Origin: Stylophora pistillata
Taxonomy: Eukaryota
Length of the DNA: 64,000 nucleotides
NCBI RefSeq assembly: GCF_002571385.2
Contig: NW_019218081.1
Location: 256,006 to 320,005, forward strand
Direction of reading: 5' to 3'
Position numbers and translations under genes: made by a program
Shown: positions 23,469 to 57,515 of the stretch, one piece after another
How the letters are laid out: each line of letters starts with the position of its first letter
Numbering within the stretch: the stretch's first letter is position 1
Notes under the pieces: model-generated
The model's database searches: none
The model's input: the letters and a program-made list of their open reading frames with translations, nothing else
Told to the model about the DNA's origin: nothing

Positions 23469-26400
23469 ATGGATCCATTTCGTGTTAAACTGTTGTCCCT
23501 CTCAAACGGAATTACTGATCGAGAGTTCGTCGACTTGAAGTTTATGTGCAAGCAGCACATTCCTGTTGGAGTTTTGGAGAGACTCAAAAGGCCACTAGAG
23601 TTGTTTGATGAACTTGAAAACAGAAACTTGCTGAATGCGGATAACAAGGAATTTCTGGCCGCCATATTAGGCGGAATCAATCGCTTGGAACTGAGAGATG
23701 ACTTATTGGGTAGGAATTTATAGGATCGACACATTAGTGTAGCTTCTATTCACAACAAAATTATTTACCTTACGTATTCTCCTCTAAGAAAGTATTGATA
23801 CCAACTGCAGTTTGCGATTTGCGCTCCTTCCCTAGTTCAATGTCGTAACGTCGTACTAAACAAAAAGGAACATTGAGAAGGGGCAAAAGAAGGGGGGTTT
23901 GGAATAGTGGCATTAGAGATGAAATAATGATACCATTCCAGAATACCGTAATATCCATGGAAGTGCGTCAATTTCGTGGGCCTCTTTAGAATATAGAGAA
24001 TCTTTCCTTCTTCATACTTTGGGTGACATGGTTCATGCCATTACATCTCTGGCTGTGGTCCAAGAATTTGACCTGAATTCCCCATACCTTTTGCATTTAT
24101 TAGCATAGGCAGATCTGAGATTTAAGTTATCCAGAGGCAGCTGTTTTTGATATGATATTGACATTATTGATATAATAATGTTGGTTACAGGTCAAGCTAG
24201 TGGAAGTAATGTTTCATCTCCACTGAGTACATTTCAAGAGTCTGTATGTGACCTATACAAGAATGTAATTGGATGGCTACAGCCTCTTGCATGGAATAAG
24301 TCATTTCATATTCACATCAAACACATCTATACCAATCTGCAGATGATCACAGAGACTCATCAAGGGAGAACCATAAAGAAAGAGCCCTTGAACTCCTATG
24401 TTGAGGTCTTCAGAAGGCACTCCCCTTTCACCAAGCAGAAACGCATTCTTATTGAAGGACAAGCTGGTGTAGGAAAGAGTACATTTTTGTCACTGATAGT
24501 GTATGACTGGGCTTCTGGAAATCCTAATTTACAGCAATTCCAGCTTATCCTTTTCATGGAACTGAAGCAGATGAAAGGGAATCTGAAGAGTGACATTTTT
24601 GAATTGCTCTTTCCAAGAGATTTTCCATATTCGGCTGATTATCTCTTCCAGTATATCTCTGCCAACCAAGAAAATGTTCTTTTCATTTTAGATGGTTATG
24701 ATGAAGTCAATCCTTCCCAACTAAAGGATATGGAAGATCTCATTATGGGCAAGATATTTAGAAATGCCACTGTTGTTGTGACATCAAGGCCTGGTAAAGG
24801 TTCTCGTGTGCACTGGTTTATGGATTCTCGGATTGAGATAACTGGTTTCACAAGCGAGAACATTCATGAATTTGTTCTCAAGTACTTTCAAGATGATGTA
24901 CCGATGGCTGAGAGTTTAATGGCGCAACTTGAAATGCATCCTGTTGCTGAGAACATCGCCAGAATTCCTCTCACAGCAATGCTCATCTGTGCGATGTGGG
25001 AAGAGATGCCTCAAGCAGCGCTGCTTTCATCAATGACATCTCTTTTCACTGAACTCACTCTTTTGCTTGTAAAGAGATATTATGCAAGACAAACTGGTGA
25101 GAACAGCATTGATCCTGGAAACCTCTCCACCCTGGAAGATATTCCAGAGGACCTCTTCCAGAGTCTGTTATCACTGGGAGAGATTTCACTCAACGGATTG
25201 CTGAATGATCAGTTACTTTTTGATGTTCAGGAGCTTGAGAAAAAGTGTACTTACAAAGGTGTTTTAGACATTGGCTTCCTCTCAAAGGAGTTGGGAGCTT
25301 CAAGGCTTAAACCTGTTGAGAAGTGCCGGTTTTCACACAGATCTTATCAAGAATTCCTAGCAGCGCTGTGGTTGAGCAACAAGATCAAGCAGGCTTTCAT
25401 TGACAGATCTGTCTTTGATTTTGTCAGTGTTTACATCATGAACTGCGTGTCCTCAGGGTTAGATACTGTTCTCTTTCTTTTCACACCTGGGCTGTTAGGA
25501 GATGCTTTTCCGCCTGTTCTGGAGCTTCTTTTGCTGGAAGGTGCTGCTGAAGTTGAAGAAGATGAAAGCCTAATGCAGTCATTCTTTGAAGTTTGTATTT
25601 CCTCCTTGTATGAATCAAACCAGGGACACTTGGCCTATAAACTTGGGTCACAAATGCCCCCAGGTGTGGCAGCACTACATCATTTAAATGCCACCCCATA
25701 CAAAGTTAGGGCTCTGGTTTACTTTCTGTTGAACATCCAAACAGTGCAGTCCCTACTGATAGAGCACAGTCAAGTTGGAAAGCAAGCTCTTCAAGTACTT
25801 GCCAGGTTCCTTCCTGAAATGGTATCAGTCCAAGAGGTAAACCTAAAGTCAAACATGATCACTGATGGAAGTTTGATTGCCTTTACAAAATCACTCTCCT
25901 GTGTACCTCATCTGGTAAGGTTCTCACTTGCAAGCAATTGCATAACAGATCATGGCTTGGGGTTTCTTATCTCAGCCTTCAAAGATCTTCCAAATTTAGA
26001 ACACATGGATCTCCAAGGCAACAAGATCTCTGAAACAGGCTTTGGATTGGTAGCTCCAGCACTGTCACTCTTGCCAAAACTGAAAGACCTGCGGCTTGGT
26101 TGTCCAGTGGTATCTGGGACAGAAGAAATACCAAAAGGTTCAGTGTGGGTATTTCTATTTACATATAAGTGTTTTAGTGCTTTCAAGCTGTTTATACTCT
26201 GTTTTCACTCTCAAAATCATGCTGCCAATCTCAGGAACATTCAAATCACTCAGGGCTTTTTGAAGCAAGAATATTAGAGCCAAAATTGATATGAACAGCT
26301 TTGCCAGATTAAGTTTGCCACTAGTTTTGCAGTTGTGGCTGGAATAGGGTGTGGTTGAAAGGAATGATTTTGGGAAGTTGAGTCAGCATTTTACCCATTT

Positions 26401-30266: not shown

Positions 30267-31101
30267 TGAAAGATGGTAGAAGCAAAACTTATTGTACTTG
30301 CGGTTGTCAATTCATTATTCAGTGCGTTTGGAAGTATCATGAATTTAGTGGTTGCTTTTGTCATCGTTAGCGATCGAAACCTGCAAAAAGGGCTAAATCT
30401 TCTGATCTTAAACCTTTGTGTAGCAGATTTCATGAACTGTGCGATTTCGCAACCGATATAAGTGCACGCTGTTCTAAACTTTAGTGAGACAAGCACGACG
30501 TTTATAAAAGCTTTTACGATGGTCGCTTCTATCACTCTGCACGCTTCCACCATGAATCTACTGGCCATGACAATCCACCGAATGAGAGCACTTTCCCGCC
30601 CTTTTTCGTATCTTTTTCTGTCGAAGCAGCAAGTTGCGATCGCAGTCACCCTGGTTTGGGTAATGTCGGTAATGGTGGGTGTGTTTTCTCGCCACGGACA
30701 GTGGCAAACTTGTCGCGGCGTATTTTCATTTGGCAATGACATTAGCGTGGATTGCTGGCTACGTCGGCCTTTTCTGTTTGGTGAAAAGGCACAGAGCAAG
30801 AATTGTTTCATTGGAAGGCTCTCCCACTACACAGTTACAAACTGCTAGTCTCGAATATGAGAGCGAATCCGTCAAAACCTCGGCCATTTTGGTGGCTTCC
30901 TCGTTGATCTGTTTCTTCCCGGATATTGTGTTGGATTTTATGGGACGTGCAGACGAGAGCAGAAAGTCTTGGGGATTTACCATTTTGTTTATGAGCTCAT
31001 CCTTAAACCCATGCTTAATCATCTGGCGTAGCCAACAGTTTCAGGCTGTACTTACCAAGATGTTGCGGGACGTTCGGCAGTGGCGAGGTTTTATGGAATG
31101 A
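30267..31101 (+). pseudogene. Disrupted single-exon class A GPCR (nonsense codon at 30459-30461, +1 frameshift near 30683-30687)
   Basis: Three ORF pieces are colinear with the intact paralog at 36526-37332 (LHAS, YESE..KTSAILV, ICFFPD, NPC, RSQQF); TAA lies where the paralog has Tyr. Confidence 0.85.
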
Positions 31102-36525: not shown

Positions 36526-37332
36526 TCACACACATCTGCAAGTTTTGCGAAACGCTCTCCTAAACTGCTGACTTCTACAAACAAAAACACACGGATTTAT
36601 CAAAGCGTTGGCGAAAAGCAAAGTGTAAGACCATTGCAATCTGGTTTCTTCGGCTCTTTCGAGCAGTTCATACACTACATCGGGAAAGAAACAGATAACA
36701 GATGTGCCCACTAGAATAGCCGAGGTTTTGGCTGCCTCACTCTCGTATTTCAAATTCGCCATCATAAAAGGACATGAAGGCATTCCTTCTTTAAAAGAAA
36801 TTCTATGCTTGTGTTGGCGCACAAGCCCGTATATCCCTGCATAACTTCCAAGCCACGCCAGAATGACGACAAGATGGATATACGGTGCTGCGGATCTTCC
36901 TGGTTCGATATCAAAAACAATCGCCATAATAACGGCTGCTGACCAAACGGTAACGATAGCGCACCAAGTTTGCTTTCTAGATATGAGAATGATATGTCTG
37001 AAAAGGCGAGAGAGCGCCCTCAAGCGATACAGCGTTATGGCGACCAGGTTGTTGGTCGAAGCGTGAAGACTGACAAAAGTGAGAAAGTGAAACGCCTTCA
37101 ATTTGTAACGATCAGTTTCCGTTTCGTGCGCGAGAAGGTAGATGTAAATTGGCTGAGCTACGACGTTGCTGAGAAGATCTGCCAATGATAGGCTTAAAAT
37201 AAACAGGTTTAGTCCCTTTCGTAGATCTTTGTTCTTAAAGATCACGAAAACCACGGTAGTGTTCAATACAGTCCCGAACACACTAAGAAGACCATTCAGT
37301 ACTGATAGGCTGATGACTCGAGGAGAAGTCAT
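36526..37332 (-). CDS. Compact single-exon class A (rhodopsin-like) orphan GPCR, 268 aa
   Basis: TM1 GxxxN, TM2 LSLADL, TM3 xxR (LYRL), TM4 W, TM6 CFFP, TM7 NPC, helix 8 FRRAF. Confidence 0.85.
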   Translation of the reverse strand: MTSPRVISLSVLNGLLSVFGTVLNTTVVFVIFKNKDLRKGLNLFILSLSLADLLSNVVAQPIYIYLLAHETETDRYKLKAFHFLTFVSLHASTNNLVAITLYRLRALSRLFRHIILISRKQTWCAIVTVWSAAVIMAIVFDIEPGRSAAPYIHLVVILAWLGSYAGIYGLVRQHKHRISFKEGMPSCPFMMANLKYESEAAKTSAILVGTSVICFFPDVVYELLERAEETRLQWSYTLLFANALINPCVFVCRSQQFRRAFRKTCRCV

Positions 37333-44400: not shown

Positions 44401-45622
44401 ATGGTGTTCATGGTCACTATCACGCGCATTATGACTCTACAAATGAATGGAATGGTCAGGCTTCACGATGTTGTTTGGGGAATTACTCCGATCACTGCAG
44501 CTTGTGTAGGTTAGTAAGTCTACGTTATGAACCGCATCTAACCAGTCCTACATAATTTTTCAGATGTCCTTGATTTTTTATGCACCTCATGGTTCAACAC
44601 TATAAAACCTCTTGCTTTATTGCAAATGAGTAGTAGTACTTTTTACTTTGTGCGAGAGACCTTTTTAAAATTACCTTTTTTTGAGATATTAGTTGAACAT
44701 ATGTTGCCCCATAGAGTGGCAGTAGCAACATGTGCTTCTCATCAGACCTATTTTCCTTCTGTCTCAGGTTTATGACAGTATTGTATTACCTTAATGATGT
44801 AACAGATGGTGGAGAAACAGCCTTCCCAGTTGCTGAAGAAGAACATATCAACCAAACGGTATGAGAAGCATTCAGAAAAATTTAGGTGTTGAGTAATTGA
44901 AGTGCAAGGTGACTTAACCAATCCTAGTAGTTACTAGGATTTCCCTTCAAGAAACCATCTTTAAATTGCAAAAATAATTATATTTGAAAGAATAATCACC
45001 TCAGATAAAGAGATGTCAGATGTCTAAGGTATTTTTGAAAAATGAAGTCCTTCTCCACCCCCCCCCCCAGAATAATAACCGTCCACCGATACCGGTGCAG
45101 CACTCTGATCAACTTGGTTGTCGAACCAACTGGGAGCTGTTATGGGAGCTGCTTGAAAAAGTAACCAGCTAAGCCGTGCAAAATCTGTTTTTTTTTTCCT
45201 AAGGCCACTTAACGTGCATGAAAGGAATTAGCGACTGAGCGAAAGTTGCGTGAATATTGAGGGCAGGAGGAGCGAACGAGCAGCGCCCAAATTTTGCGCG
45301 TTTAATTTAGAACCCACCGTGTCAACTTGATTTTTCTTACCACTAGGGTTATGTTCTACTTAATACTTGAAATTGTGTATAGGAAATTGAAAAGGAAGAC
45401 CGGACAAATTTGAGCATCCACTGTTAGGACGCCAATGTGGTTGTTCGTCCTGCGAGAGGCAAAGCTGTAATGTGGTACAATCACTTGATCAGTAATGTGA
45501 CTGGTTTGCTTGGAGAACATGACATGCGTTCTTTGCACGGAGGATGTGATGTTCTGGAAGGTTCCAAGTGGATAGCAAACAATTGGATAAATGCACCATT
45601 TAAATGGACAGATGGCAACTGA
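38484..45622 (+). CDS. P4HTM: Transmembrane prolyl 4-hydroxylase-like 2OG-Fe(II) dioxygenase with EF-hands, about 11 exons
   Basis: LDGIK|VGHVQEV...RSLRPLLF|EIPDFLSKEEC; EF loops DRGSDGKISTLE and DKDRDGLISEKE; RLSKQTWL; SEDLQVVQY..HGHYHAHYDS; YYLNDVTDGGETAFPVA; SLHGGCDVLEGSKWIANNW. Confidence 0.9.
40576..40722 (+). pseudogene. Degenerate tandem duplicate of P4HTM exon 3 and its splice acceptor
   Basis: Aligns with 40737-40880; keeps the TTGCCTTTCTAG acceptor but reaches TAA after four codons. Confidence 0.85.
41345..41540 (+). mobile_element. LINE-type 3' tail fragment
   Basis: GAGCCCTTGGCTCGGG hairpin, AATAAA, and TTCA-type terminal repeats. Confidence 0.45.
41596..41940 (+). mobile_element. 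tRNA-derived SINE family; copies at about 46880-47150 and 60480-60745
   Basis: TAGCTCAATGG A-box and GGTTCGAGCCC B-box; body GATATTCTAGTCTTCTC...CCCGTCTCCTGC...GAGATTACTGTG shared by the three copies. Confidence 0.85.
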
Positions 45623-47749
45623 TGGCGCAGATTAAAATTTATTTCCATTTTCGCGTAAAATGCAACGCAAAATTAAGTCTTTGCTAACCGACAATTGCTT
45701 TCTTATGAATGTTAAATTTGCAGATATTGATGTAGAGGGTATGTATTTTTGCGATAAACGCTGACTTTTTACCTATTCCTGTTGTTTTCTGGTTGTAATG
45801 AGCCCTCGATAACTTCGTCCTCTGGATGTGATTCGCTAAATGGAGGAGGTTAATGGATTAAGACATACAGCTTCAATTTGTTAATGATTTGCTACATTTT
45901 TTTAAAATTCTGTTTCCACTTTAACCTATTCTTGCATAATCTTTCCTACGTTGCTATTTAAACAATATAATTTTTTTGTCGTTGTTGCATATTTTACTGT
46001 AGAACACTTAGCACTAGTTAAAAAGTTAGGGAAGTGTTCGAGTTCGTGATTCACCAGGAAATAACCGCATTTTTTTTGCTGTAATTGAGCTTGAAATCGT
46101 TATGGTATATTCTGCGGCGAAATTCCTTCCTGATTCTACGTCCAAAGTTTATATCTGATTTCTACATTTTGTTATCTAACTGCATTAAGTGGTAAAGTAG
46201 AGTAGAAATAACGCGCAAATTGAGTATATATATTTAATAAATAAACCCTTTCAGGAGACTGGTGTGTCGACTGATGGTGTCCGTGGCTGAGAGATTGTCC
46301 AAAAAATGAATATTTGGCCGAGTAGCGAAGCTTCGAGGGCAGAAGTGAATTTTTTCGGACAACCTCTCAACCAAGGACATTATCAGCCGACATGCCAGCA
46401 AGCCAGAAGGGGTTTATTTATTTTTTAACCCTTCTACTAATTTTCATACCGTGCGTTGGCAGCAAATTTTGTTGACTTTTTTGTACTTTGCAGAGCAGCA
46501 TTTAAGATCAGCTTTTTTGATGTCGCTTTCACTGTACTCTACAAAACGAGTTCGTTCTTCTTCCATGTAAAGTAAGTGAAACTCTTTCGAGCTGGCTTTT
46601 TTCCGCTAGTACTGTTTCTTTTCGACAGAAATAATCGGAGAACAAATTTCGAGCTAAACGGGAATTATTGCGTGAGAACTATCCTGTGATTTTGCATCAC
46701 GTGACGTAAAGTAGCCAATAGAATCGCGCGTAGGTGGGTTAGAACACGCGATATTTGGACAGTTATTGATTTTGTACATAATATATAATAGAGCAATTGA
46801 TAATAAATAACTTTTTACACCTGGTGTGTAGCATCGTTGATTATCTTCACCAATACTCATAGTCCCGGACTAATACTCATGGTCTCGGACAATACTCATG
46901 GTCTTAAAATAAGAAAGGAGAATTTACTACCTTTCTATAATCAAGAAATGGATAGATATTCTAGTCTTCTCGGATAAGGACGAATAAACCGTAGGCCCCG
47001 TCTCCTGCAGGGTTAGGGGTAGGAGACGTTAATTTCTCACGCACGAGATTACTGTGCGGTGGATGTCCTCCCCTGGGTGGGATGGGTGGGTGTTGGCCCT
47101 TAAAAGCCCCTATGGGGAGTGGTCAATTAACCTATGTATATATGTATGTGGTTTGTTTTCTGACTCACCCTACGGGCTCGTCCAAATATAGCGCAACCTC
47201 GTAAAAATACTCAGCGATACTACACACCAAAACTTTGAATGAGATAGATCGTAGACCTTAAGCAACAGGTCTAGCTTTGGTAAGGAAAATTATCTTACTT
47301 TTTTCGCGACGTCCTTTTACTGGACTTTCATGGATACGGACCTTCCTCCGGTAGAGGATAAATATAAACCCCTTGCAGAAAACACCTCATGACAAACATA
47401 ACATACCCCAGTTATTGCTAAATCAAATGAATTTAAGGTAACGCCAGTAATTAACGACAGAAAGGGACAGCGCCATTACTATAATGGGATACTTCATTGT
47501 GTCTAACACAAACACACGCCTTTATGGTAGAATATCCGCTGTTCACAACTGAGCACTGTCCAAAGAAGCGGAAGTAACCGAACAAAAGCGGCCCTATAAA
47601 GCTCCGTGGAAATGAATGCTCTCATGTCTTTTATTTTGGGAGAAATGTAGTCTGTTGAATAATTGGTAAGTACATGATTAAATGGAAAACTTCAGAAAAC
47701 GTTGATTCAATCCCTTTTGCCGCAAAGTTTGCGAATGTCGCGAACAAAC

Positions 47750-48295
47750 CATAACATAACATAAAACCTTTATTTACACACGATAAGGTTTAAAGCTCCC
47801 AAGCTTGTGGGGTCGTGTATACTAACTACGTCACAAAATATATACATGTAAATGTTTAATAAAAACTAACTAAAAAACGTAAGAACTGAAAAGTAAACAT
47901 AGTCGCTGACTCTGTCTCGACGTGGAGATTGCTGTGCCGTCAAAGATAAAATCTTTGAAATAATCCCTGACAGTAAGCCGTTTCATTAATTCCTTGAAGC
48001 TTACATTAATTAGTTATTTTTTTCATTGAATTTCACCAGATTCCATAATATAGGCCCTCGATAGGCTAATGAATCTTTCATAAATCTGCTTTTGCGTCTG
48101 CGGATATCTGCTACCTCATGCCCTCTCGGTGAGTAATTGTTGTCTCGTTTACTAAAAATATTTCCACATAAATTGTCAGGTAATATGTTTTTGTATGCGT
48201 TGTACATTGATTTAAATATTTCCAGTTTGTAACTTAATCTAATTGTTGACCAATTCACGGTTTTCATTACTTCACTGGATGCCATATCCCAACCC
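47750..48295 (-). mobile_element. 5'-truncated LINE 3' end (CR1/L2-group-like)
   Basis: ORF2 C-terminus-like peptide VNWSTIRLSYK...SLAYRGPILWN (48010-48369), followed by a 3' UTR, AATAAA and a (TTATG)n tail. Confidence 0.7.
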
Positions 48296-48809
48296 CATCG
48301 TCTAATGGGGTTGGGATACGGATGACCTATCGTGTATGAAGTCATATGTTTTAAAATGTTAAAACACATATAGCAGGGTCATATTTGTACGACAGAATTA
48401 AAAAAGAAAAAAAAATTGACATGTTTTGCCCAGCAATAGAATGTTACAGCTTTTTATCAGGCATCAGTATGTAGCTGGCGGCAATACAACAGAAAAAGCA
48501 GGAAAAAATATTTTCTAAAAAGTGAGGAAGGTCTTTAAACTCTACAATTCCATGGTGAAGCTATCACTTTATTCCCCTTCACCCCCATTTCACCTCAGCC
48601 ACACGTGTGCATTAGAACTGACAAAATGTTGCCGGTCATTAAACTGCTAAGATATCTCTTTTGGTCTATTTGTACTTCAACAGTTGACAGAATTTGTGGG
48701 AAAATTGTCTAGAAAATATTTAAGTTTGATGTCATCTTGCCCTGCATAATCTGAAGTCAAGATTTTCTCTCTAGGAAGATTACTTTTGAAGAGTAATTCT
48801 GCTGGCAGA

Positions 48810-51734
48810 ATGGACTCCACTGAGGGGAAATATTCGAGCGAAGAAATCAGTACCGAAGAAGTGATTAGAACAGTCAAGACAATGTTGCTTCACTCTATAT
48901 CGCTGGACAACTCAGAAGGTTTTACCATGGCTTTAGAAGCTTTGGAAGAACTCAATATTGGTCTCAACTGGAGTGCCTTTTCCGAACCCCTTCTGCCTGG
49001 TCGTGGTGAGTGGAATACTCCTCTTACCCTGAGTTCAAAGCTGGGTCGGACAAGCATGGTGAGCTCTTTACTTCAAAAAGGTGCAAATCCCGACCTATGT
49101 TCTGATTCTGGAGTTGAGAGATCGACTCGGCGGACACCTCTCCATGAGGCGAGTAAATCTGGGCATCTTCAAGTCATCGACTGTCTGCTGACACATGGGT
49201 GTAACGTCAACTCACTTGACGCACGTGGTTGGACACCAATTCATGATGCAATTTGTCATGACAGGATGGACATTGCATTAAAGTTACTTGAAAATGGTGC
49301 AGATCCAAGAAAGAGCTTTTTCGTAGCTTCTTCAGATCTGAAGAATCTTGATCTCATCGGAAGAGGATCTCTAATGTTTTCTACCAAGCCTTATACACTA
49401 GAGTCATCAATACCTGCGTCATTTGAGTGGAATTGTTTATCGTTTGCTGCTAATTGCCACCAACCATGGTTAGTGGCAAAGCTAATAGACGAATATTTAC
49501 AAGATGCCGTCGAATGCCACAGTTCGTCTCGCAGAACGGCTCTTCACGAGGCTGTCAAGTTACCAGAAAGTTTGAATCTCGATAAGGAAGCTGTTGTCCG
49601 AAATCGGCACGAAACCATGAAAATCTTACTGGATGCAGGTGTCAATCCTAATATTCCCGATCACTTGGGGAAAAACGCTCTTCATCTCTTCTTCGACCAT
49701 GTTAATTTGGCCAAAGTTATCGTAAAAAAGTATTCCAAGATCGTCCTCGAGACAATCCTCTTACTGCACGAATATGGCATCCGTCTAGACATGGCGGACC
49801 ACAAGGGAAGGACTGTACTTCACCAAGCCGCTGCGTTTGGCTTGGAAGAGACAGCGCAGATTCTTCTTAACCTTGGTGCTGATATTCACCGCGTAGACAG
49901 CGACAGAAACACGCCAGCTCATGTTGCAGCTTACCATGGTAATTTTGAAGTACTAAGCTGCCTGATGAATCCGCACGTTTCGCATGCGGAGCTGATCAAC
50001 CGTCACGGAAACACGTTGTTACATTGCGCGATAATGCCAAAAGCCGATGAGGATGCTCTGATACGGGTCGCGCAAACTTTGATAAGCGAGCAGGGCTTCT
50101 ATAAAACGCGGGTAAATGCTGATGGAGCCTCAGAATATGACCTGGCTGTTATGTTTCAGTTCAACGCGCTGGCTCGCTTGCTTATTGACCAAAGTGATGG
50201 GGTTATGGTTGCCAATAGTGATGACCAGTCAGATACCACAGAAGTCCGCCGACATGAACGAGTTACAGGTAACGAAACCGATACCCCTGAAATGAAGAAG
50301 GAAGAAAACACTGTGGATGGCGAAGGTGTTAGAGACTGTGACAGGCATTTTGAATTGGGAAATGAAACTGATTTTGATGATAACTGCGACGACTCTGAAA
50401 TACCTGAATTGAGAATTGACGCCAACACTAACGTCAACGAGTATTTAATGAATCTTTGTCAAGAGTATCGCGTCAGAGGCTTCCACTTGGAAGACGAGGG
50501 AACATGCCACGAGAGATGCAAAATTGCTAAACAGACCGTGGATTTTGTCGAAGACCTTTTGAAGCTTGGTGCTGAGGACGATGGGAGGTTCACTTGTGAA
50601 ATTTTACGCACTGGAAGTGCGTTTGAAGGCTACAGAATCGGAAAACCCGATGAATTCGATTATATGTGTGAACTGAAATCCCTAACGGAAGAAAAATGTG
50701 AAATTCTTGTGACTAGCGATCCTGGGTTTGTTCGTGTCCGAGTTAAAGAGGACTACAGAGACGAATGGAGGATGTTCCTATCCGAAGGAGGATTTCTTGA
50801 CGCCTCAAAAATCAAATCTTTTATGGTGGAAAACTTGTACATGAAGTCTGGTTCGAAAGCCTTTGCTCGGAAACGATGGAATTTGAGCTTTAACACGACA
50901 AGCTATGATTTGTGCATGTTATGTCAACCGGTTATTGCCACGAGCAAGGCTGGCTTGAAGATGACTTTACTTTGGCAAGGGAATGTCTACAAATTTATGC
51001 CTATTGATATTGACATCACTCCAGCAATAGGCTTTCCCGGGTGGCCAAAGTCAGCTAAAGTACCCCCATCCCATGTCCTGAGAGGTTGTGACGAAGTGGG
51101 GTATCACATTGTTCCCAAGTCAGAAGGAGGAGATTCGTTGTTGTGGAGATTGTCCTTTTCCGTTGCCGAACTACAGATTCTACAGAACACAACTACAATC
51201 CAAGCAGCTTGTTACACAGCCCTGAAAATAATCAAAGGACAGACGTCACTAAGAAGTGTAAGATCGCAATCTTTCTCTCATTTTGGCTACCTTCATACTT
51301 ACGTCCTCAAGATGAAGTTCTTTGAAGAACTAGAACGCTGCCAGGACCCAGAGATGTGGCAAGAAGGCAAGCTAGTTGAGCGGATTTGCTCCGTTTTAGA
51401 ATCTACAGCACTCCTTCTAAGCCAGAAACGGCCCTCTCAAGTGGAATCGTACTTCCTGCCAGGGCACAGGGTCCTCCGACAGGCAGACAAACACTTTGGA
51501 AACTTCGTGGCAGTATCTATCAAAACAACCCTTCGGAAGGTAATACGAATGCTGCGCAAGGAACCTGAGACGCCGGCAGAAAATTCACCGGACGACACTG
51601 GCTTCATAATGCAGTTTGACCCAGATTCAGGTTCAGAATCGGACAGTGAAAGTGGTGCGATTATTAACGATCCTGGCACAGTGGCGAATAACATCGCTGC
51701 TTCGCTATTGTCGTCCATTTACAAGAGTAAATAA
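48810..51734 (+). CDS. Ankyrin-repeat / cGAS-like receptor (Mab-21 family nucleotidyltransferase) fusion; single coding exon, 974 aa from ATG 48810
   Basis: About 9-10 ANK repeats (TPLHEA, TPIHDA, TALHEA, TVLHQAA, TPAHVAA), an acidic linker, then TGSAFEGYRIGKPDEFDYM, IDIDITPAI, WP, HIVPK, WRLSFSVAELQIL, HTYVLK and ESYFLP, all cGAS/Mab-21 signatures. Confidence 0.92.
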   Translation: MDSTEGKYSSEEISTEEVIRTVKTMLLHSISLDNSEGFTMALEALEELNIGLNWSAFSEPLLPGRGEWNTPLTLSSKLGRTSMVSSLLQKGANPDLCSDSGVERSTRRTPLHEASKSGHLQVIDCLLTHGCNVNSLDARGWTPIHDAICHDRMDIALKLLENGADPRKSFFVASSDLKNLDLIGRGSLMFSTKPYTLESSIPASFEWNCLSFAANCHQPWLVAKLIDEYLQDAVECHSSSRRTALHEAVKLPESLNLDKEAVVRNRHETMKILLDAGVNPNIPDHLGKNALHLFFDHVNLAKVIVKKYSKIVLETILLLHEYGIRLDMADHKGRTVLHQAAAFGLEETAQILLNLGADIHRVDSDRNTPAHVAAYHGNFEVLSCLMNPHVSHAELINRHGNTLLHCAIMPKADEDALIRVAQTLISEQGFYKTRVNADGASEYDLAVMFQFNALARLLIDQSDGVMVANSDDQSDTTEVRRHERVTGNETDTPEMKKEENTVDGEGVRDCDRHFELGNETDFDDNCDDSEIPELRIDANTNVNEYLMNLCQEYRVRGFHLEDEGTCHERCKIAKQTVDFVEDLLKLGAEDDGRFTCEILRTGSAFEGYRIGKPDEFDYMCELKSLTEEKCEILVTSDPGFVRVRVKEDYRDEWRMFLSEGGFLDASKIKSFMVENLYMKSGSKAFARKRWNLSFNTTSYDLCMLCQPVIATSKAGLKMTLLWQGNVYKFMPIDIDITPAIGFPGWPKSAKVPPSHVLRGCDEVGYHIVPKSEGGDSLLWRLSFSVAELQILQNTTTIQAACYTALKIIKGQTSLRSVRSQSFSHFGYLHTYVLKMKFFEELERCQDPEMWQEGKLVERICSVLESTALLLSQKRPSQVESYFLPGHRVLRQADKHFGNFVAVSIKTTLRKVIRMLRKEPETPAENSPDDTGFIMQFDPDSGSESDSESGAIINDPGTVANNIAASLLSSIYKSK

Positions 51735-53097
51735 ATTTTACTCGGGAAACCCTGAATAGGTTCAGTAGTGGCCATTGTACAGGACTCTGGGGAGATAGTT
51801 GTCCTACCAGTATTGTTTACTCATCCGAAAAATTATTTGAACAATTAGGACCTACAGTCCATTCCACTGATGGGAAAAGTTTTGAAGTGTAATTTTGAAA
51901 GATTTTCAATTAACTGATCAACAAGAACAGAAAGCTTAAATTAAACACTTTATTACAATAATTACAACAAATGATTCCTTTGCCTCTCTATCTCCAATAC
52001 ATTAAATACTATTTTCTTGTAACAGTTACAAAGTAACATGAGACATGAGCTGGAGATGCTGATAACAACGAAAACCAAAAAAGTTGTGGAGGTTTGGGTG
52101 TTTCAAGTCTTCCCAATTTAGTGCACATTGTTGCATCTGTAGCTTTGGACGACGATTTCAAACTCCTTGATGAAACGAACACGTAAAATTTAATTCAGGT
52201 CCCATTACCAAACAAATCCAAGACAACGTTGTCGGAAAAAAACATTAAGGGCACATTTAATGTGCACTAGAGAACGAAAAAGGTTCAAAATAAATTGAGT
52301 GGGATCAACTATTTTTCATTTTTTCTACTTTGTGCTCAGATATTGATATTGTTTCTCTTAGCAATTCCCCACAACAATCATATATAACAAGTTGTAACGG
52401 TGTAAATGTGATTCATTGACTGAGGTAAACATAGCTGGATATTTACCACGAATTGTGTGCTTATCCAGCTATCTTAACCAAATGAGCTTGATCAATAAAG
52501 GATTACTATAATTATGGCATATAGACTACACCGAAAAAATTGCCAAATGAATTCACAAAACCAGAAGCCCTTAACATGTTGTAATTTTCTTTGTTTGACA
52601 TTTGTCTAAAGAAATACACGGACTCTCTTGCCCGCAGAACTGGGCAGAACACTTTTCCGAATAGTGTAATAAGTTACTTTGAACTTGCACATTTCTGTAT
52701 GTAAACCAACTACCGGTACGTTTTATCTTTTTTGCTGTGTGATTATTAAAGTGAGCAATCCCAGGCAGAAAAACTTGTACCCATATGCAGCTGAATAGAA
52801 TACAGGACTTGCTTCATGTCTCTCACTCTCAGAGCCAGCTGTGTGATAAGTATTATCCATGTACACTTTGAGATCAGTTGTCTAACATGCAAAAATCTAC
52901 TTGCTTATTTAGTCATACTATGATTATGAAAAGTAAAAAAGAGGAGTACATCACAGAGCAAGAAAGAACTCTCAGTGCTCTCAGGAATGTGTTTCCTATC
53001 TACAAAGATCTGTATGGTTTTATTCCAAACACACAAAGTTCAAAAGGAGTCGATAGAGCTCAAAATCTTTCAAAGTTGAGACCTTTTTTTGTAAACA

Positions 53098-56000
53098 CTA
53101 TCTGCTTGAGGAGGGTCCTTCTCTTGGTGACTCAGGATCAACCTGCATTCTGTGGTGTTCATCTGATGGTGATGTGCCACTTGATGTGATGGTTAACAAA
53201 TCACTAAAGTCCATTCCTGTTCCTTCTTTTTCCTAAAAAGAAAACCAGACCTATTAGTTTTAGAAATACAATAAAAACAAAGACACGTATTTGATAATTA
53301 TATTCCTTGTCATAAAAATAATAACAGTCATCATCATTATCATCATCGCCATCATTGCATAATTTATGAAAATTTCTTTGACATTCACATTTTTAGTGCT
53401 TTCACTCCCATGATTTTATTATGAATTCTCCTTACTTGTCTGCTTTACGATTCTCATGATGTTGGTTTGGGGAATTTAGCATTGGATCCACTGATAATTG
53501 CCTAATTGATATTTTTCACCACTTGCCTGCTTGATACTGTCTTGACACTGTAATCTGGAGAAATTTTGTCTCGGTCACTCATAGGAGTTTAATTAAGGGT
53601 TAAGCTCTTACGTTGTTCTGCAACAAGTGCCTCTCTATTGTCAGAATAACGTAAGTGTCTGTTATCAGTGAGAATAACATATGTAGACAGACTGGTTAAC
53701 AGCATGGTATACAAGACACTCACGGATTTATATTCTAAGAACATTTCTTTGAAGGTCAAGAAGTCTGTAAAGCTCATTAGCATTTCAAAAATGTCTCCTC
53801 CAATTTGGTCCTGGCGGCTTCTGCAAGTAGAGCAAGAAAACAAATCAGTGTGCATGAGATAAAAAGATCCTGTTATGCTCTCAGTTGATTTCATTTTTAC
53901 TTATGAAAAAAAGCACCATGTCTACATTTCTTTTTCTGAACATGCATGTGTCTTCTTCTAAAATGAAATCCCTCTTCCACTCAATGAAAATTGTTCTTGA
54001 TATGTACTTAGATTAAACTGAGGTTGACAACTTACTCTAGAGACTTTGAAAACTCTTCCATGGAGAAACCTGATATTCTTTTTTTAAGCTCTTCTTCGAT
54101 GTAATTTTCCACTAGGGAAACCTGAGATACAAACAAGTAAACAAAAATACAGAAACTACAATATGATGGTAATGTGCACTACTAGAAAAGTCCATGGGAT
54201 TAACCATTTAATTTTTATGGATGGAGAGGGTAGGGAGGGTGTGTTTCTGGAATGACAAACTCAGAACAACAACAACAACAACAACAACAACAAAACAGAG
54301 ATGAAACAAATTCCCAAAACAAAAAGTTTAGTCCCTCAGCCACAATAAAAAAGACAATTTAACCCTTAAACACCCATGAGTGACCAAGACAGAATTTCTC
54401 CTTACAATATCAATACAATGTTAAGTAGACAAGTGAGGAGAATAAACAAAAATATCAGTTAGGCTACTACATCATAAGGATTGTATGACAGACAGCGGGG
54501 AGAATTACTAATGAGATCTTGGGAGTGGAAGAGTTGAATACATGGCCAATAGTAGAGTTGAATGCCATTCAATAAACACCAGCCTCCAGAGCTCAACACC
54601 AACTCTTCAACTTACTAGCCTGGACTAGTGGAAATAAAAAATCACTAGCCAAAACTGAATTTCTACTAGTCTGTGGCTAGTTGGCTACTGTTGGCCTCTC
54701 TAATTATTATGTCAACATAGTTCTTACATACAACAGCTAGCTTTCCTTTAGCCTTGAAGAGTCAAGACCTACACCAGACTACTCACATATTCCTTGAATA
54801 TATCCATGTATATAAGCTTGTTTTCTTCTTCATCTGTAAAGTGTTGGTAGTACTTCTCTTTGAAGTCATGCTGCATTGACTGAAATTTTTCCTCTGCAAA
54901 AAAAAAAAAAACAAAAACAAATACATACATGTGAAGCCAGGAATGAATCCATCGTTGATCCTTTCTCTCAGTTTCCTCCTGACTATTAGATCTGAGAATT
55001 TAGCATTGAACTAAACAATTTCTCCAATTTTATATTTCTCTAAAGTGTCATTCTCATGTCTACTTGACATTGTGTACATGTATTGCTTGATCTTGCAAGG
55101 AGGATTACCCATTGGCCATCCTTTTGAGTGAAAAGGGTACAAGGAGCTTGCTTGTGGACAGACATCACAAGATCAGGGTAAACCCTTTCACTGTCGGAAA
55201 TGATAAACATGAATACTACAGTCTCCTTCCATAAAGAGATATTTTTATGGTTCATGAGTTAGAAGCTTATTCTAGAATCTTCCGATGCAAGTTTTTAAGC
55301 AGCAGTCAGCATTATTTCCTTAAATCCCCTTCATATTAAGTAATCTGCTCCAAGGCCTTACTTTTCATAGCTTGCAACCCTCCCACCCTAATTAGACTAC
55401 CCTACATACTCATTATCTAGGGCTTGACACTAACGGTAGCCCAGTAGCCACACACTAGTAGAAATTCAGGTTTGGCTAGTGGTTTTCGATTTCCACTAGG
55501 CAGTTTGGATAGTAAACAAAGTGAAATTGTCGTAACATCTATAATGCCACCAGCCACTTGGCTAATAAGTTGAAAAGTTAATTAGTGTCAAGCCCGGATT
55601 AACTTTCAGAACTTACCCATAATTATATCTTCTATGTGACCAACAGTTGTATCAAACTTTTTATCTGAGCGACTGGACCTGGTGTTACAAACGAAATATT
55701 ACAAGAAACAATTTGCTTGGTCCGTCACATTTGATTATAAAATCTTTCATAAGTGTGTTTGTGATTCTATAGTTTGGATAAGAAAAGGTGAAATAAATTG
55801 CAATCAAACAATGGATGAATGGTGACTAAAATAATCAATGCAAACTGCAAAGAAAAGCCAAAAACAGAATTCAGACTTACACAGGATTTAAACCTGTGCC
55901 TGCCTGATACCAGGCAAGTGTGATTATATTCTGGGTTGGAAAAATGCTGATTTGTAAAATTTTTACCTTGCAGTGAAATACAAAACAGAGTTACAGAGAT

Positions 56001-57515
56001 GCTGCTTTACTTAAAATATATTCCTACTCATGAAAAATCACCAGGCCCCAGTTGTTCAAAGGGTGGATACCAGTAATGCTATTCAAGAGATAAATCTTTA
56101 TCCAGTGGATAGAGCAGCATGTTTTGTTAACACTTTTCTGCTGGAGAGCAACTTATGCTTTGGTTAGAGGTATGGACCTTTTGAACATCTGGGCCCTGAC
56201 AAGTGTACAGGAGTGAAACAAAGAAATGACGGAATACTAATTTTTTAAGATTTGGTTTACACTTAAAACATTGTCAAGACTTCAAGTTAGCCACCTACTA
56301 TTGACTAACACTAAATTTTGGTTGCCAACAGTCAACTTCCAGTTGCATTGGCAACCAGCTGGTCGCAACTTTGAACTCTGATACTAAATGAGTAAGCGAC
56401 AGTGTAACCGCATTTATTATCCAACTACACTAAGACGAGTACAAATAATGCCATAGACGAGTACAAATATCATGCGGTATTTGTACTTGTCTATTGTAGA
56501 GTACCNNNNNNNNNNNNNNNNNNNNNNNNNNNNNNNNNNNNNNNNNNNNNNNNNNNNNNNNNNNNNNNNNNNNNNNNNNNNNNNNNNNNNNNNNNNNNNN
56601 NNNNNNNNNNNNNNNNNNNNNNNNNNNNNNNNNNNNNTGTATTTTGACGAGCCCTACGGGCTCAATACGGCACAATACGGCACAATACGGCACAACTCAA
56701 TACGGCACAACTCATAAAAATACTCAGTGATACTACACAACAAAATGTCTAATAAGATATATATACAAAGTGCCCAATATAATATTCTTAAAATGTTGAT
56801 TTCATTGAGTGAAAACAAAACCCAAAACGGCACAAGCTGCTGACATAGGAACAAAAGAATATGACGGCAGTTAATGTATGGCGGTTGGCCACAAAAGGAT
56901 CTGTTACTCAGACTTGCCATTGGACTTCCACATATGTAAGATTATACTTAAACTAATTATACACAATAACATTCACTTCCAAATTAAATGTTGCCTTTAA
57001 AGTTAGTGATAGAACAAAGCACATCTACTCTTGTATGGTACACCTTTTTAGATTACTCAGTACATTACACTTTACATTGCTAGGAGTCATAGCAATGCTC
57101 GCGGAAAGACTCAATACAGAACGTAAGCGACCTACGGTTCTCTTTCGTAAAGAAGATCTAACCATAAATTACGAATTTAATTTCATCACTTCCTCTGTTG
57201 ATTATTTTCATTTTACAGACCACGAATTTTTACGTTAGAATTGTTCAATATCATGCAAAATCACGCTAGTTAGGATCTGTCAAACTTGTGCAACAAGTCT
57301 CTTGTAAACTGGTGACCTGAGAATCATACAAAGCTTATAAACGACTATCGATCACTAAAACTGGATGTAAAAGTATATTAGAAATTATTACCTTCCTGTT
57401 GCCAAATCCTCGTCTAATTCAAGCTGCTTAAAATCTAAACAAGAAGAAAAACAATTTTCAACTGGCGAAAACACATCAGAAACAAAGCAACGTTATTTCA
57501 AACCTTACCCGCCAT
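53098..57515 (-). CDS. ARL2BP: ARL2-binding protein (BART), about 7 exons
   Basis: DKKFDTTVGHIEDIIM, EENKLIYMDIFKEY, GDIFEMLMSFTDFLTFKEMFLEYK, EKEG; 7-nt first coding exon ATGGCGG|GTAAGG. Confidence 0.92.
54264..54292. repeat. (AAC)n microsatellite
   Basis: Direct reading of the sequence. Confidence 0.9.
55418..55597. mobile_element. Short MITE with GGGCTTGACACTAA TIRs; related partial copy near 54587-54695
   Basis: GGGCTTGACACTAAC...ATTAGTGTCAAGCCC; flanks ATTATC / ATTAAC may be a decayed 6-bp TSD. Confidence 0.6.
56506..56637. other. Assembly gap (N run) in an ARL2BP intron, next to short AATACGGCAC repeats
   Basis: Run of n characters. Confidence 1.

What the first reader, a model, noticed from the sequence alone, without database searches (positions are those of the whole stretch)
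48810..51734. Ankyrin-repeat-fused cGAS-like receptor with an apparently intact catalytic triad
Seen: one uninterrupted ORF joins about 9-10 ankyrin repeats to a Mab-21/cGAS-fold domain with GS (50613), E-F-D (50652-50660) and a third acidic strand IDID (about 51003-51014). Known: this hG[GS]x9-13[DE]h[DE]h plus distal D pattern is the metal-binding triad of cGAS, cGLRs and bacterial CD-NTases, which make cyclic dinucleotides; MAB21L developmental proteins have a degenerate site. No vertebrate cGAS zinc-thumb motif is evident. Inference: an active second-messenger synthase whose input may be a protein or ligand read by the ANK array rather than bare dsDNA, i.e. a modular sensor-cyclase of invertebrate immunity. 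ANK-Mab21 architectures occur in other invertebrates, so the novelty would be its ligand and product.
Basis: partly seen in the sequence, partly recalled or inferred. Interest (0 to 1): 0.82.

Follow-up and report, generated by a model that had tools for sequence, protein, structure and literature searches.

The report
Ankyrin-fused cGAS-like receptor of a coral
This is a real, expressed and strongly conserved stony-coral gene that joins about ten ankyrin repeats to a cGAS-type signalling enzyme with an intact active site. This type of fusion was already reported for corals in 2023, so only its trigger and its product remain unknown.

Summary
One open frame (48810-51734, +, 974 aa) encodes ten recognisable ankyrin repeats, a 70-residue acidic disordered linker and a Mab-21/cGAS nucleotidyltransferase domain. 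GS, E-F-D and IDID sit at exactly the coordinates given.

- **Fold:** the NTase domain models at pLDDT 91 and superposes on DNA-bound mouse cGAS at Z 31.
- **Active site:** G602, S603, E615 and D617 are invariant in 27 coral orthologues, and D735 is kept in 26 of them. All five are at least 90% conserved across 100 distant homologues.
- **No zinc thumb:** confirmed.
- **Expression:** a spliced transcript contig (5'UTR exon, GT..AG intron, then the whole coding sequence in one exon) occurs in three runs, one on record as polyA RNA-seq.
- **Selection:** both domains are under purifying selection (dN/dS 0.10-0.17 NTase, 0.18-0.31 ANK), with conserved synteny.
- **Context:** the genome holds five more ANK-Mab-21 genes, about 55 Mab-21 matches and 10 STING matches.

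The architecture is not new. Li et al. 2023 list ANK-cGLR fusions, including in Stylophora pistillata, which an earlier scan note names as this genome. Ligand, product and the role of the ANK array remain untested. This is an ordinary, well-supported member of a known kind; interest is moderate to low.

The parts
48043..48128 (+). Exon 1, non-coding 5'UTR. Two transcript contigs begin at 48043. In the coding frame it holds a stop and then no ATG; it also carries two short upstream ORFs.
   Evidence: read laying pieces X2 rec 22 and X5 rec 27 start at 48043, X11 rec 5 at 48053; frame check
48129..48774 (+). 5'UTR intron of 646 bp, with donor CTCG|GTGAGT and acceptor TTCTCTCTAG|G
   Evidence: Joint 48127->48774 (cut +1), GT..AG, seen in X11 (polyA RNA-seq), X2 and X5; sequence context
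48775..53477 (+). Exon 2: a short 5'UTR remainder, the whole coding sequence and a long 3'UTR. The 3' end is approximate.
   Evidence: Contigs run unbroken from 48774 to 52400, the end of the laid stretch, and are 1.0-1.25 kb longer. An 81.6% conserved collinear block with orthologous contig L023 ends at 53477. AATAAA at 53270.
48810..51734 (+). Coding sequence, 974 codons plus stop, with no intron
   Evidence: orthologues in L023, L024 and L025 are likewise single uninterrupted frames
48849..50195 (+). Ankyrin array, residues 14-462: an N-cap helix pair plus ten repeats (anchors at 70, 109, 142, 208, 243, 289, 335, 368, 402, 441)
   Evidence: Pfam; AF2 pLDDT about 90 over this part; PDB matches are generic ankyrin and DARPin; anchors
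50196..50411 (+). Acidic disordered linker, residues 463-534 (pI 4.05). It is the least conserved part, with dN/dS about 0.5.
   Evidence: pLDDT 21-36; pI; dN/dS; conservation 0.46
50412..51584 (+). cGAS/cGLR nucleotidyltransferase domain, residues 535-925 (Pfam Mab-21 605-793, Mab-21_C 801-904)
   Evidence: Model pLDDT 91, pTM 0.91; Foldseek 8gjw 2.7e-16 and human cGAS about 1e-15; VIA-align Z 31.2, rmsd 2.9 A over 328 residues to 4o6a
50613..50618 (+). G602-S603, the phosphate-binding GS of the hG[GS] motif
   Evidence: Invariant in 27 orthologues, at least 90% in 100 homologues; aligned to the GS of human cGAS and of Cv-cGLR1
50652..50660 (+). E615-F616-D617, the first two metal-binding acids
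   Evidence: Invariant in orthologues; aligned to the cGAS NEFD motif; E and D invariant in 48 distant ANK-Mab-21 proteins
51012..51014 (+). D735, the third metal-binding acid (second D of IDID)
   Evidence: At least 90% conserved in 100 homologues; invariant in alignment A3; aligned to the D of the IDVD motif in Cv-cGLR1 and to the D of MB21D2; 26 of 27 orthologues
51585..51731 (+). C-terminal tail, residues 926-974: an acidic Ser/Asp cluster (DSGSESDSES), then a predicted helix with low confidence
   Evidence: orthologue consensus keeps an FDxDSxSESDDDS-like cluster

Best explanation
The locus is a two-exon gene with its whole coding sequence in one exon. It lies in a stony coral, probably Stylophora pistillata, and encodes an ankyrin-fused cGAS-like receptor (ANK-cGLR). 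Shown here: the gene is transcribed and spliced, both domains are under purifying selection, the C-terminal domain has the cGAS fold, and every motif known to be needed for catalysis is present. Inferred: the protein is an active nucleotidyltransferase that makes a cyclic di- or oligonucleotide read by one or more of the genome's STING paralogues. Also inferred: the N-terminal ankyrin array, tethered by a flexible acidic linker, is the input or regulatory module. It would bind a conserved protein or other non-nucleic-acid partner and so switch the NTase domain on or release it. The array more likely reads a conserved host or conserved microbial partner than a fast-evolving pathogen factor.
For: **Gene and expression.** A GT..AG joint at 48128/48775 is seen in three runs, one of them polyA RNA-seq. 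One contig (X2 rec 22) carries the 5'UTR exon plus the entire ORF. Exon 1 has an in-frame stop and no following ATG.

**Fold.** pLDDT 91, Z 31.2 to cGAS-DNA, and best sequence and Foldseek match to Cv-cGLR1.

**Active site.** G602, S603, E615 and D617 are invariant and D735 is kept in 26 of 27 orthologues. The same five, plus S782, E787, K806 and K834, are at least 90% conserved in 100 homologues down to about 21% identity. K770, R780, S782, E787, K806/K809, Y831 and K834 align with human cGAS K362, R376, S378, E383, K411/K414, Y436 and K439 (alignment; the residue roles come from my knowledge of cGAS structures).

**Selection and orthology.** dN/dS is 0.10-0.17 for NTase and 0.18-0.31 for ANK. 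There are 36 full-length orthologues with the same architecture, in Orbicella, Oculina, Montipora and unnamed corals. Synteny is collinear over about 24 kb, and a 2OG-Fe(II) oxygenase is a conserved upstream neighbour.

**Pathway.** The genome has 10 STING ligand-binding-domain matches and about 55 Mab-21 matches.

**Input through ANK, not nucleic acid.** There is no zinc thumb. NTase pI is 7.95 and the whole protein 5.39. The spine helix has net charge 0. Li et al. report higher pI for cGLRs that sense dsDNA or dsRNA. The concave-face positions of the ankyrin repeats are as conserved as the rest of the array (0.73 against 0.71 for non-framework positions), with invariant W141, C216, D296, D365 and H376. 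ANK is retained in 47 of 48 long homologues, including a lungfish protein.
Against: No enzymatic activity, ligand or product was or could be measured here. A pI of 7.95 is not acidic, so nucleic-acid binding is not excluded. Model coordinates and PAE were not available, so triad geometry and any ANK-NTase contact are unverified. The full-length model is only moderate (pLDDT 69.6, pTM 0.58). The docking test of ANK against NTase gave no answer. Most of the 140 cGLRs that Li et al. purified showed no activity with the ligands tried (15 new active enzymes), so an intact motif set does not guarantee detectable activity. One orthologue (P0018) has V at the D735 position.
Confidence: 0.6

Rival explanations
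1. It is a conventional nucleic-acid-activated cGLR. dsRNA or dsDNA binds the NTase domain as in cGAS, Cv-cGLR1 or Sp-cGLR1. The ankyrin array only localises, oligomerises or auto-inhibits the enzyme and is not the sensor.
For: The closest solved relatives are cGLRs that sense nucleic acids (8gjw, 8gjy; ligands from Li et al.). The model superposes best on DNA-bound, active-state cGAS. NTase pI of 7.95 is slightly basic.
Against: There is no zinc thumb. The spine helix has net charge 0 and the N-terminal helix -1. Whole-protein pI is 5.39, and the linker and tail are strongly acidic. The ANK groove positions are conserved as if they bind something specific.
Confidence: 0.25
2. It is a non-enzymatic signalling scaffold. 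The Mab-21 domain acts through protein contacts, as reported for shrimp Mab21 proteins that activate IKK-epsilon, and the ankyrin array recruits partners. The catalytic motifs would be retained but unused.
For: A 2026 paper reports crustacean Mab21 proteins acting outside the canonical nucleic-acid-sensing scheme (PMC12928593; abstract seen). Many purified cGLRs are inactive in vitro.
Against: The 25-residue segment holding GS and EFD is almost invariant in 27 orthologues. All nucleotide-contacting positions stay conserved down to about 21% identity, which is hard to explain without catalysis. NTase dN/dS is 0.10-0.17.
Confidence: 0.07
3. It is a relay or amplifier. The ankyrin array binds a nucleotide messenger, as the ankyrin repeats of RNase L bind 2-5A made by OAS. 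One cGLR's product would then switch on this one.
For: This rests only on analogy (RNase L, from my own knowledge) and on the genome holding about 50 other Mab-21 genes that could supply signals.
Against: The ANK domain shows no specific similarity to RNase L. Its best PDB matches are consensus ankyrins and DARPins. No test was possible.
Confidence: 0.05
4. It is a non-functional retrocopy or an annotation artefact, in which two neighbouring genes are read as one frame.
For: The coding sequence has no intron.
Against: A spliced 5'UTR and a single transcript contig cover the whole ORF. The same full-length frame occurs in 36 orthologues. dN/dS is well below 1 in both halves, and synteny is conserved.
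Confidence: 0.01

Closest known systems
ANK-fused cGLRs catalogued by Li et al. 2023 (Cell 186:3261; bioRxiv 10.1101/2023.02.22.529553), including S. pistillata proteins in their Fig. 4C and Table S2 (for example PFX22559.1, with Ank_2 at 58-325 and Mab-21 at 740-1030)
   Same: Same architecture (N-terminal ankyrin array, C-terminal Mab-21 NTase with a putative active site), same animal group and probably the same species.
   Different: PFX22559.1 has different domain coordinates and fits the 1106-aa paralogue on contig C235, not this gene. I could not show that this exact protein is in their tables, because two were cut when stored and a search for its motif peptides found nothing. No sequence carrying a TPLH or TALH ankyrin signature appears in their table of tested proteins, so apparently no ANK-cGLR of this kind has been assayed full length.
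Cv-cGLR1 of Crassostrea virginica (PDB 8gjw)
   Same: Best sequence match (E 1.9e-13) and best Foldseek match (2.7e-16). GS, EFD and the D of IDVD align with the motifs of the query.
   Different: It is a stand-alone enzyme of about 350 aa with no ankyrin array, and only about 20-30% identical. Its ligand and product cannot be transferred to this protein.
Sp-cGLR1 of Stylophora pistillata (PDB 8gjy), a dsRNA sensor that makes 3'3'-cUA
   Same: Same fold (Foldseek 6.8e-15) and probably the same genome (earlier scan note s1-771603).
   Different: It is a distant paralogue (E 5.5e-07, about 19% identity), a multi-exon gene without ANK.
Vertebrate cGAS
   Same: Same fold, with Z 31.2 and rmsd 2.9 A over 328 residues. 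The catalytic triad and nucleotide-contact residues align.
   Different: This protein has no zinc thumb, no basic N-terminal tail and no basic spine helix. Identity is about 21%, and it carries an ANK array in place of a disordered basic N-terminus.
MAB21L1 / MB21D2 (Mab-21 developmental and orphan proteins)
   Same: Same Pfam family. Weaker structural and sequence matches (5eog E 4e-4; 7lt1).
   Different: Here the site is complete and conserved.
Lungfish XP_043939976.1 (Protopterus annectens, 994 aa, uncharacterised)
   Same: Same ANK plus Mab-21 architecture with GS, ExD and D retained. It is 35% identical in the NTase domain and groups near the coral orthologues in a FastTree tree.
   Different: It is a vertebrate protein and not an orthologue. 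Tree support was not assessed.

Membership tests
cGAS-like receptors (cGLR; Mab-21/cGAS-type CD-NTases of animals) | Mab-21 nucleotidyltransferase core plus C-terminal helical lobe (the bilobal cGAS fold) | tested here: met
   Pfam Mab-21 2.2e-20 and Mab-21_C 7.8e-06; model pLDDT 91; Z 31.2 to 4o6a; Foldseek 8gjw 2.7e-16
cGAS-like receptors (cGLR; Mab-21/cGAS-type CD-NTases of animals) | The hG[GS]x9-13[DE]h[DE]h motif and a distal third acid | tested here: met
   G602-S603, then 11 residues, then E615-F-D617, with D735 as the third acid. Invariant or at least 90% conserved at three alignment depths.
cGAS-like receptors (cGLR; Mab-21/cGAS-type CD-NTases of animals) | Conserved nucleotide-contact residues of the acceptor and donor pockets | tested here: met
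   K770, R780, S782, E787, K806/K809, Y831 and K834 align with human cGAS K362, R376, S378, E383, K411/K414, Y436 and K439. They are invariant or nearly so in orthologues. Their functional roles come from my own knowledge.
cGAS-like receptors (cGLR; Mab-21/cGAS-type CD-NTases of animals) | Triad side chains converge on one metal site in three dimensions | tested here: inconclusive
Convergence is inferred only from strand topology (GS after strand 1, ExD on strand 2, D735 on the long central strand) and from the superposition on cGAS.
cGAS-like receptors (cGLR; Mab-21/cGAS-type CD-NTases of animals) | Ligand-stimulated synthesis of a cyclic di- or oligonucleotide | not testable with these tools
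   This needs purified protein and NTP assays.
cGAS-like receptors (cGLR; Mab-21/cGAS-type CD-NTases of animals) | A cognate STING-type receptor in the same genome | tested here: met
   10 matches to PF15009 above the cut-off, nine of them on contig C69
Vertebrate-type cGAS (dsDNA sensor, strict sense) | A zinc thumb, H(x5)CC(x6)C, between the SFSxxE strand and the following helix | tested here: not met
   A 9-residue gap faces the human cGAS thumb. The segment at residues 788-806 has one Cys and no His.
Vertebrate-type cGAS (dsDNA sensor, strict sense) | A basic ligand-binding surface (basic spine helix, high pI) | tested here: not met
   Spine helix 568-588 has net charge 0. NTase pI is 7.95 and the whole protein 5.39. 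No electrostatic surface could be computed.
Ankyrin-repeat proteins | A tandem array of 33-residue helix-turn-helix repeats with a TPLH-type signature | tested here: met
   Ank_2 6.7e-37 and Ank 1.1e-34; ten anchors; pLDDT about 90 with paired helices; ankyrin-1 and DARPin matches down to 7.5e-76
ANK-cGLR fusion class of Li et al. 2023 | ANK array and an active-site-bearing Mab-21 domain on one polypeptide and one transcript | tested here: met
   A single ORF; a single spliced transcript contig spans it; the same architecture in 36 orthologues and in 47 of 48 distant long homologues

The most novel reading that the evidence does not exclude
The ankyrin array is itself the pattern- or danger-recognition surface. 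It would bind a conserved protein (a host guardee or a conserved microbial or symbiont factor) and allosterically switch on the NTase. ANK-cGLRs would then be a protein-sensing class of cGLR that is ancient, reaching from corals to lungfish, and that works without nucleic acid.
Probability: 0.3. Interest if true: 0.7.

Novelty: new member of a known kind. Interest (0 to 1): 0.33.

Why it matters
Most animal cGLRs are orphans: their fold and active site are known, but nobody knows what activates them. A cGLR that is permanently tethered to a conserved protein-binding array gives an experimental handle, because its partner can be fished out with the ANK domain. This orthologue is attractive for that purpose. 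It has one coding exon, is expressed, is single-copy with conserved synteny across stony corals, and sits in a genome with many STING paralogues to match products against. The architecture itself is published, though, so what this locus adds is a good candidate and some evolutionary context, not a discovery.

Tried and rejected
- **Docking of ANK (1-462) on NTase (535-925):** the verdict was 'no answer' (score 0.00). This is evidence neither for nor against an intramolecular contact.
- **Promoter motifs:** the NF-kB site GGGRNWYYCC has 0 matches in the window (3.4 expected). The ISRE-like GAAANNGAAAS has 4 matches (2.9 expected), none near the promoter. There is no support for an immune-inducible promoter.
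- **Rfam on 46000-48800:** nothing found. The very deep RNA signal at 46.9-47.2 kb comes from an interspersed repeat.
- **Species proof by identity to the Sp-cGLR1 crystal sequence:** two stand-alone paralogues were tried. One had no match at E 1e-10 and the other was only a distant match (2.2e-20), so neither is the same gene.
- **Search for this protein's motif peptides in Li et al.'s supplementary tables:** no hit, but two tables were cut when stored, so this is uninformative.
- **Names for distant ANK-Mab-21 representatives:** only the lungfish entry carries a name.
- **The look-up of encoding contigs for the Montipora orthologue P0022:** not on record.
- **ANK domain against PDB for a specific relative such as RNase L:** only generic ankyrin matches.
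- **Joined exon 1 plus exon 2 mRNA:** I neither built nor searched it. The coding sequence lies wholly in exon 2, and exon 1 was only read in frame, by reference.
Full report
**1.

The ORF listing gives one open frame, 48786..51734 on the + strand. Its first ATG is at 48810, which gives 974 codons.
- GS at 50613 (G602 S603)
- EFD at 50652-50660 (E615 F616 D617)
- IDID at 51003-51014 (I732-D735)

Pfam reports several ankyrin families (Ank_2 6.7e-37, Ank 1.1e-34), Mab-21 at residues 605-793 (2.2e-20) and Mab-21_C at 801-904 (7.8e-06). Ten TPLH-type repeat anchors lie between residues 70 and 441.

**2. Gene model and expression**

Transcript contigs from four public runs were laid on 46500-52400.
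- Three runs show the same joint, which skips 646 bp with GT..AG ends. One of them (X11) is on record as polyA RNA-seq.
- With the one-base ambiguity resolved, exon 1 ends at 48128 (CTCG|GTGAGT) and exon 2 starts at 48775 (TTCTCTCTAG|G).
- Two contigs start at 48043.
- One contig (X2 record 22, 4728 nt) carries exon 1, the joint, and then everything from 48774 to the end of the laid stretch.
- Read in the coding frame, exon 1 has a stop followed by no ATG, so 48810 is the start codon.
- The contigs are 1.0-1.25 kb longer than the laid stretch. A block conserved with an orthologous contig ends at 53477. Together these suggest a 3'UTR of about 1.7 kb.
- These are assembled contigs, so they show presence and splicing, not expression level.

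I did not build or search the joined mRNA. The coding sequence lies entirely in exon 2.

**3. Structure**

The full-length AlphaFold model, built on 27 orthologues, is confident for the ankyrin array (about 90 over residues 15-462). It is disordered over 463-532 and only moderate for the NTase part.

I then modelled residues 535-925 with a 100-sequence alignment of diverse homologues. That model reaches pLDDT 91 and pTM 0.91.
- Foldseek ranks Cv-cGLR1 (8gjw, 2.7e-16), human cGAS-DNA complexes and Sp-cGLR1 (8gjy) on top.
- VIA-align gives Z 31.2, rmsd 2.9 A over 328 residues, to mouse cGAS bound to DNA.

I could not reach the model coordinates, so convergence of the triad is inferred, not measured.

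**4. Active site**

- In 27 full-length orthologues, the 25-residue stretch from T601 to L625 is almost invariant. G602, S603, E615, F616 and D617 are invariant, and D735 is present in 26 of 27.
- In 100 homologues down to about 21% identity, the positions at least 90% conserved are G602, S603, P613, E615, D617, D735, P738, S782, E787, K806 and K834.
- In 48 distant ANK-Mab-21 proteins, G, S, E, D, D, E and K are strictly invariant.
- The third catalytic acid is therefore D735. D733 is specific to the orthologue group, and the paralogues have T, S or E there.
- The HMMER alignment to human cGAS puts K770, R780, S782, E787, K806/K809, Y831 and K834 opposite K362, R376, S378, E383, K411/K414, Y436 and K439. 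That these residues contact the nucleotides is my own knowledge of cGAS structures.
- The cGAS zinc-thumb segment faces a 9-residue gap, and the query has one Cys and no His there.

**5. Evolution**

The word-indexed search finds 36 proteins of 730-1110 aa with the same domains. They are 51-88% identical in the NTase part. The named ones come from Orbicella faveolata, Oculina patagonica and Montipora capricornis. The closest, at 84%, comes from a Tara coral metagenome contig.

| Comparison set | NTase dN/dS | ANK dN/dS | Linker dN/dS |
|---|---|---|---|
| Pairwise Nei-Gojobori on four orthologues | 0.10-0.17 | 0.18-0.31 | about 0.5 |

- All four coding sequences are uninterrupted.
- The window and the Tara contig are collinear from about 35.9 to 59.6 kb, including a GPCR gene.
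- An exon of a 2OG-Fe(II) oxygenase at 45383-45613 matches the upstream neighbour in two other corals.

This is therefore a stable, single-copy orthologue, not a member of a fast-turnover cluster.

The ankyrin positions that form the usual concave binding face (DARPin positions 2, 3, 5, 13, 14) are as conserved as the rest of the array. Their mean conservation is 0.73, against 0.71 for non-framework positions, and 19% of random position sets reach this value. W141, C216, D296, D365 and H376 are invariant. This pattern fits a conserved partner better than an arms race.

**6. The wider family**

- An exhaustive HMMER search with the NTase part finds 418 representatives (81 at E 1e-10 or better), many of them 850-1100 aa with the domain at the C-terminus.
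- Of 48 such long proteins, 47 carry ankyrin repeats. One is a lungfish protein, XP_043939976.1.
- The window's genome (398 Mb) holds five more single-ORF ANK-Mab-21 genes, on contigs C30, C305, C191, C324 and C235. All keep GS, an ExD motif and the third D.
- In a FastTree tree these paralogues fall in separate deep branches. That tree is midpoint rooted, support was not assessed, and many 'no ANK' leaves are short fragments.
- The genome also has about 55 Mab-21 matches and 10 STING ligand-binding-domain matches, nine of them on one contig.

**7. Comparison with what is known**

Li et al. 2023 state that 87% of cGLRs are stand-alone but that some carry TPR or ankyrin modules. They say S. pistillata has 42 cGLRs and 7 STINGs. 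Three of those cGLRs are fused to additional domains, among which they name ankyrin repeats and death domains (their Fig. 4C).
- Their Table S2 lists S. pistillata PFX22559.1 with Ank_2 at 58-325 and Mab-21 at 740-1030. Those coordinates fit the C235 paralogue, not this gene.
- No sequence with a TPLH or TALH signature is in their table of purified proteins.
- No later paper in the library deals with ANK-cGLRs.
My own data agree with that (genome size, cGLR and STING counts, a pocilloporid-like closest relative), but I did not prove it.

The six ANK-Mab-21 genes found here exceed the three fusions Li et al. mention. This difference is small and may only reflect annotation.

**8. Mechanism**

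*Shown:* the gene is expressed, constrained and cGAS-folded, with a complete catalytic and nucleotide-binding motif set, and it sits in a genome with many STING receptors.

*Inferred:* it is an active cyclic-nucleotide synthase. Also inferred: the ankyrin array is the input or regulatory module. That second inference rests on several points:
- There is no zinc thumb.
- The spine helix has no net charge.
- NTase pI is 7.95, against the high pI that Li et al. link to nucleic-acid sensors.
- The linker and tail are strongly acidic.
- The ANK groove is conserved.
- ANK is retained across a large, old clade.

None of these points excludes nucleic-acid activation. The docking test gave no answer.

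I put about 0.6 on the overall statement, about 0.7 on catalytic activity, and about 0.3-0.35 on ANK being the ligand sensor proper.

**9. Verdict**

The architecture is already in the literature for corals. This is a well-behaved member of a known kind, useful as a candidate for de-orphaning cGLRs, and of moderate to low interest as a discovery.

Noticed in passing
window 24178-26277 (+): A single 699-aa ORF with a NACHT domain (8.8e-28) and weak C-terminal LRR matches. It looks like an NLR-type immune gene about 22 kb upstream of the ANK-cGLR.
   Followed up: no
window 46890-47150: A roughly 260-bp interspersed repeat with more than 3,400 first-look candidates in the genome. The 40 copies scored are mostly 94-97% identical. 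It has enormous summed depth in RNA contigs (38,000-75,000) and no Rfam match. It is absent from the orthologous position in contig L023, so it is probably a young SINE- or MITE-like insertion.
   Followed up: partly
window 36526-37332 (-) and 30273-31074: An intronless rhodopsin-type GPCR ORF (7tm_1, 3e-18), 89% identical to the neighbour of the orthologue in L023. A second, more distant GPCR-like stretch (40-46% identity) lies at 30.3-31.1 kb.
   Followed up: partly
window 45383-45613 (+): An exon matching a 2OG-Fe(II) oxygenase (PF13640), the conserved upstream neighbour of the ANK-cGLR in Orbicella and another coral. The Oculina patagonica protein model P0011 (1107 aa) carries PF13640 plus ANK plus Mab-21, so it probably merges the two genes.
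   Followed up: partly
window 1970-3475 (-): A 501-aa single ORF with a sulfatase domain (1.3e-63). An earlier scan note describes a catalytically dead, membrane-anchored sulfatase elsewhere in this genome. I did not check whether this one keeps its catalytic residue.
   Followed up: no
window 48043-48128: The 5'UTR exon holds two ATGs that open short upstream ORFs of about 4 and 10 codons, the second running across the splice junction. This could mean translational control. The minus-strand ORF 48010-48369 that overlaps this exon has no Pfam match.
   Followed up: no
window 51585-51731 (residues 926-974): The C-terminal tail has an acidic serine cluster (DSGSESDSES) that resembles CK2 sites or a DSGxxS phosphodegron. 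The cluster is kept in orthologues, but the G is not.
   Followed up: no
G000 contigs C30, C305, C191, C324, C235 (loci L013-L017): Five further intronless ANK-Mab-21 ORFs (703, 963, 917, 839 and 1106 aa), all with GS, an ExD motif and the third D. That is more ANK fusions than the three domain-fused cGLRs that Li et al. mention for S. pistillata.
   Followed up: partly
G000 contig C69, 317-354 kb: Eight of the nine STING_LBD matches on contig C69 sit in a tandem cluster within about 37 kb; the ninth is at 781 kb. One of them contains two TAG stops.
   Followed up: no
window 56506-56637: A run of 132 N (assembly gap or masked stretch).
   Followed up: no
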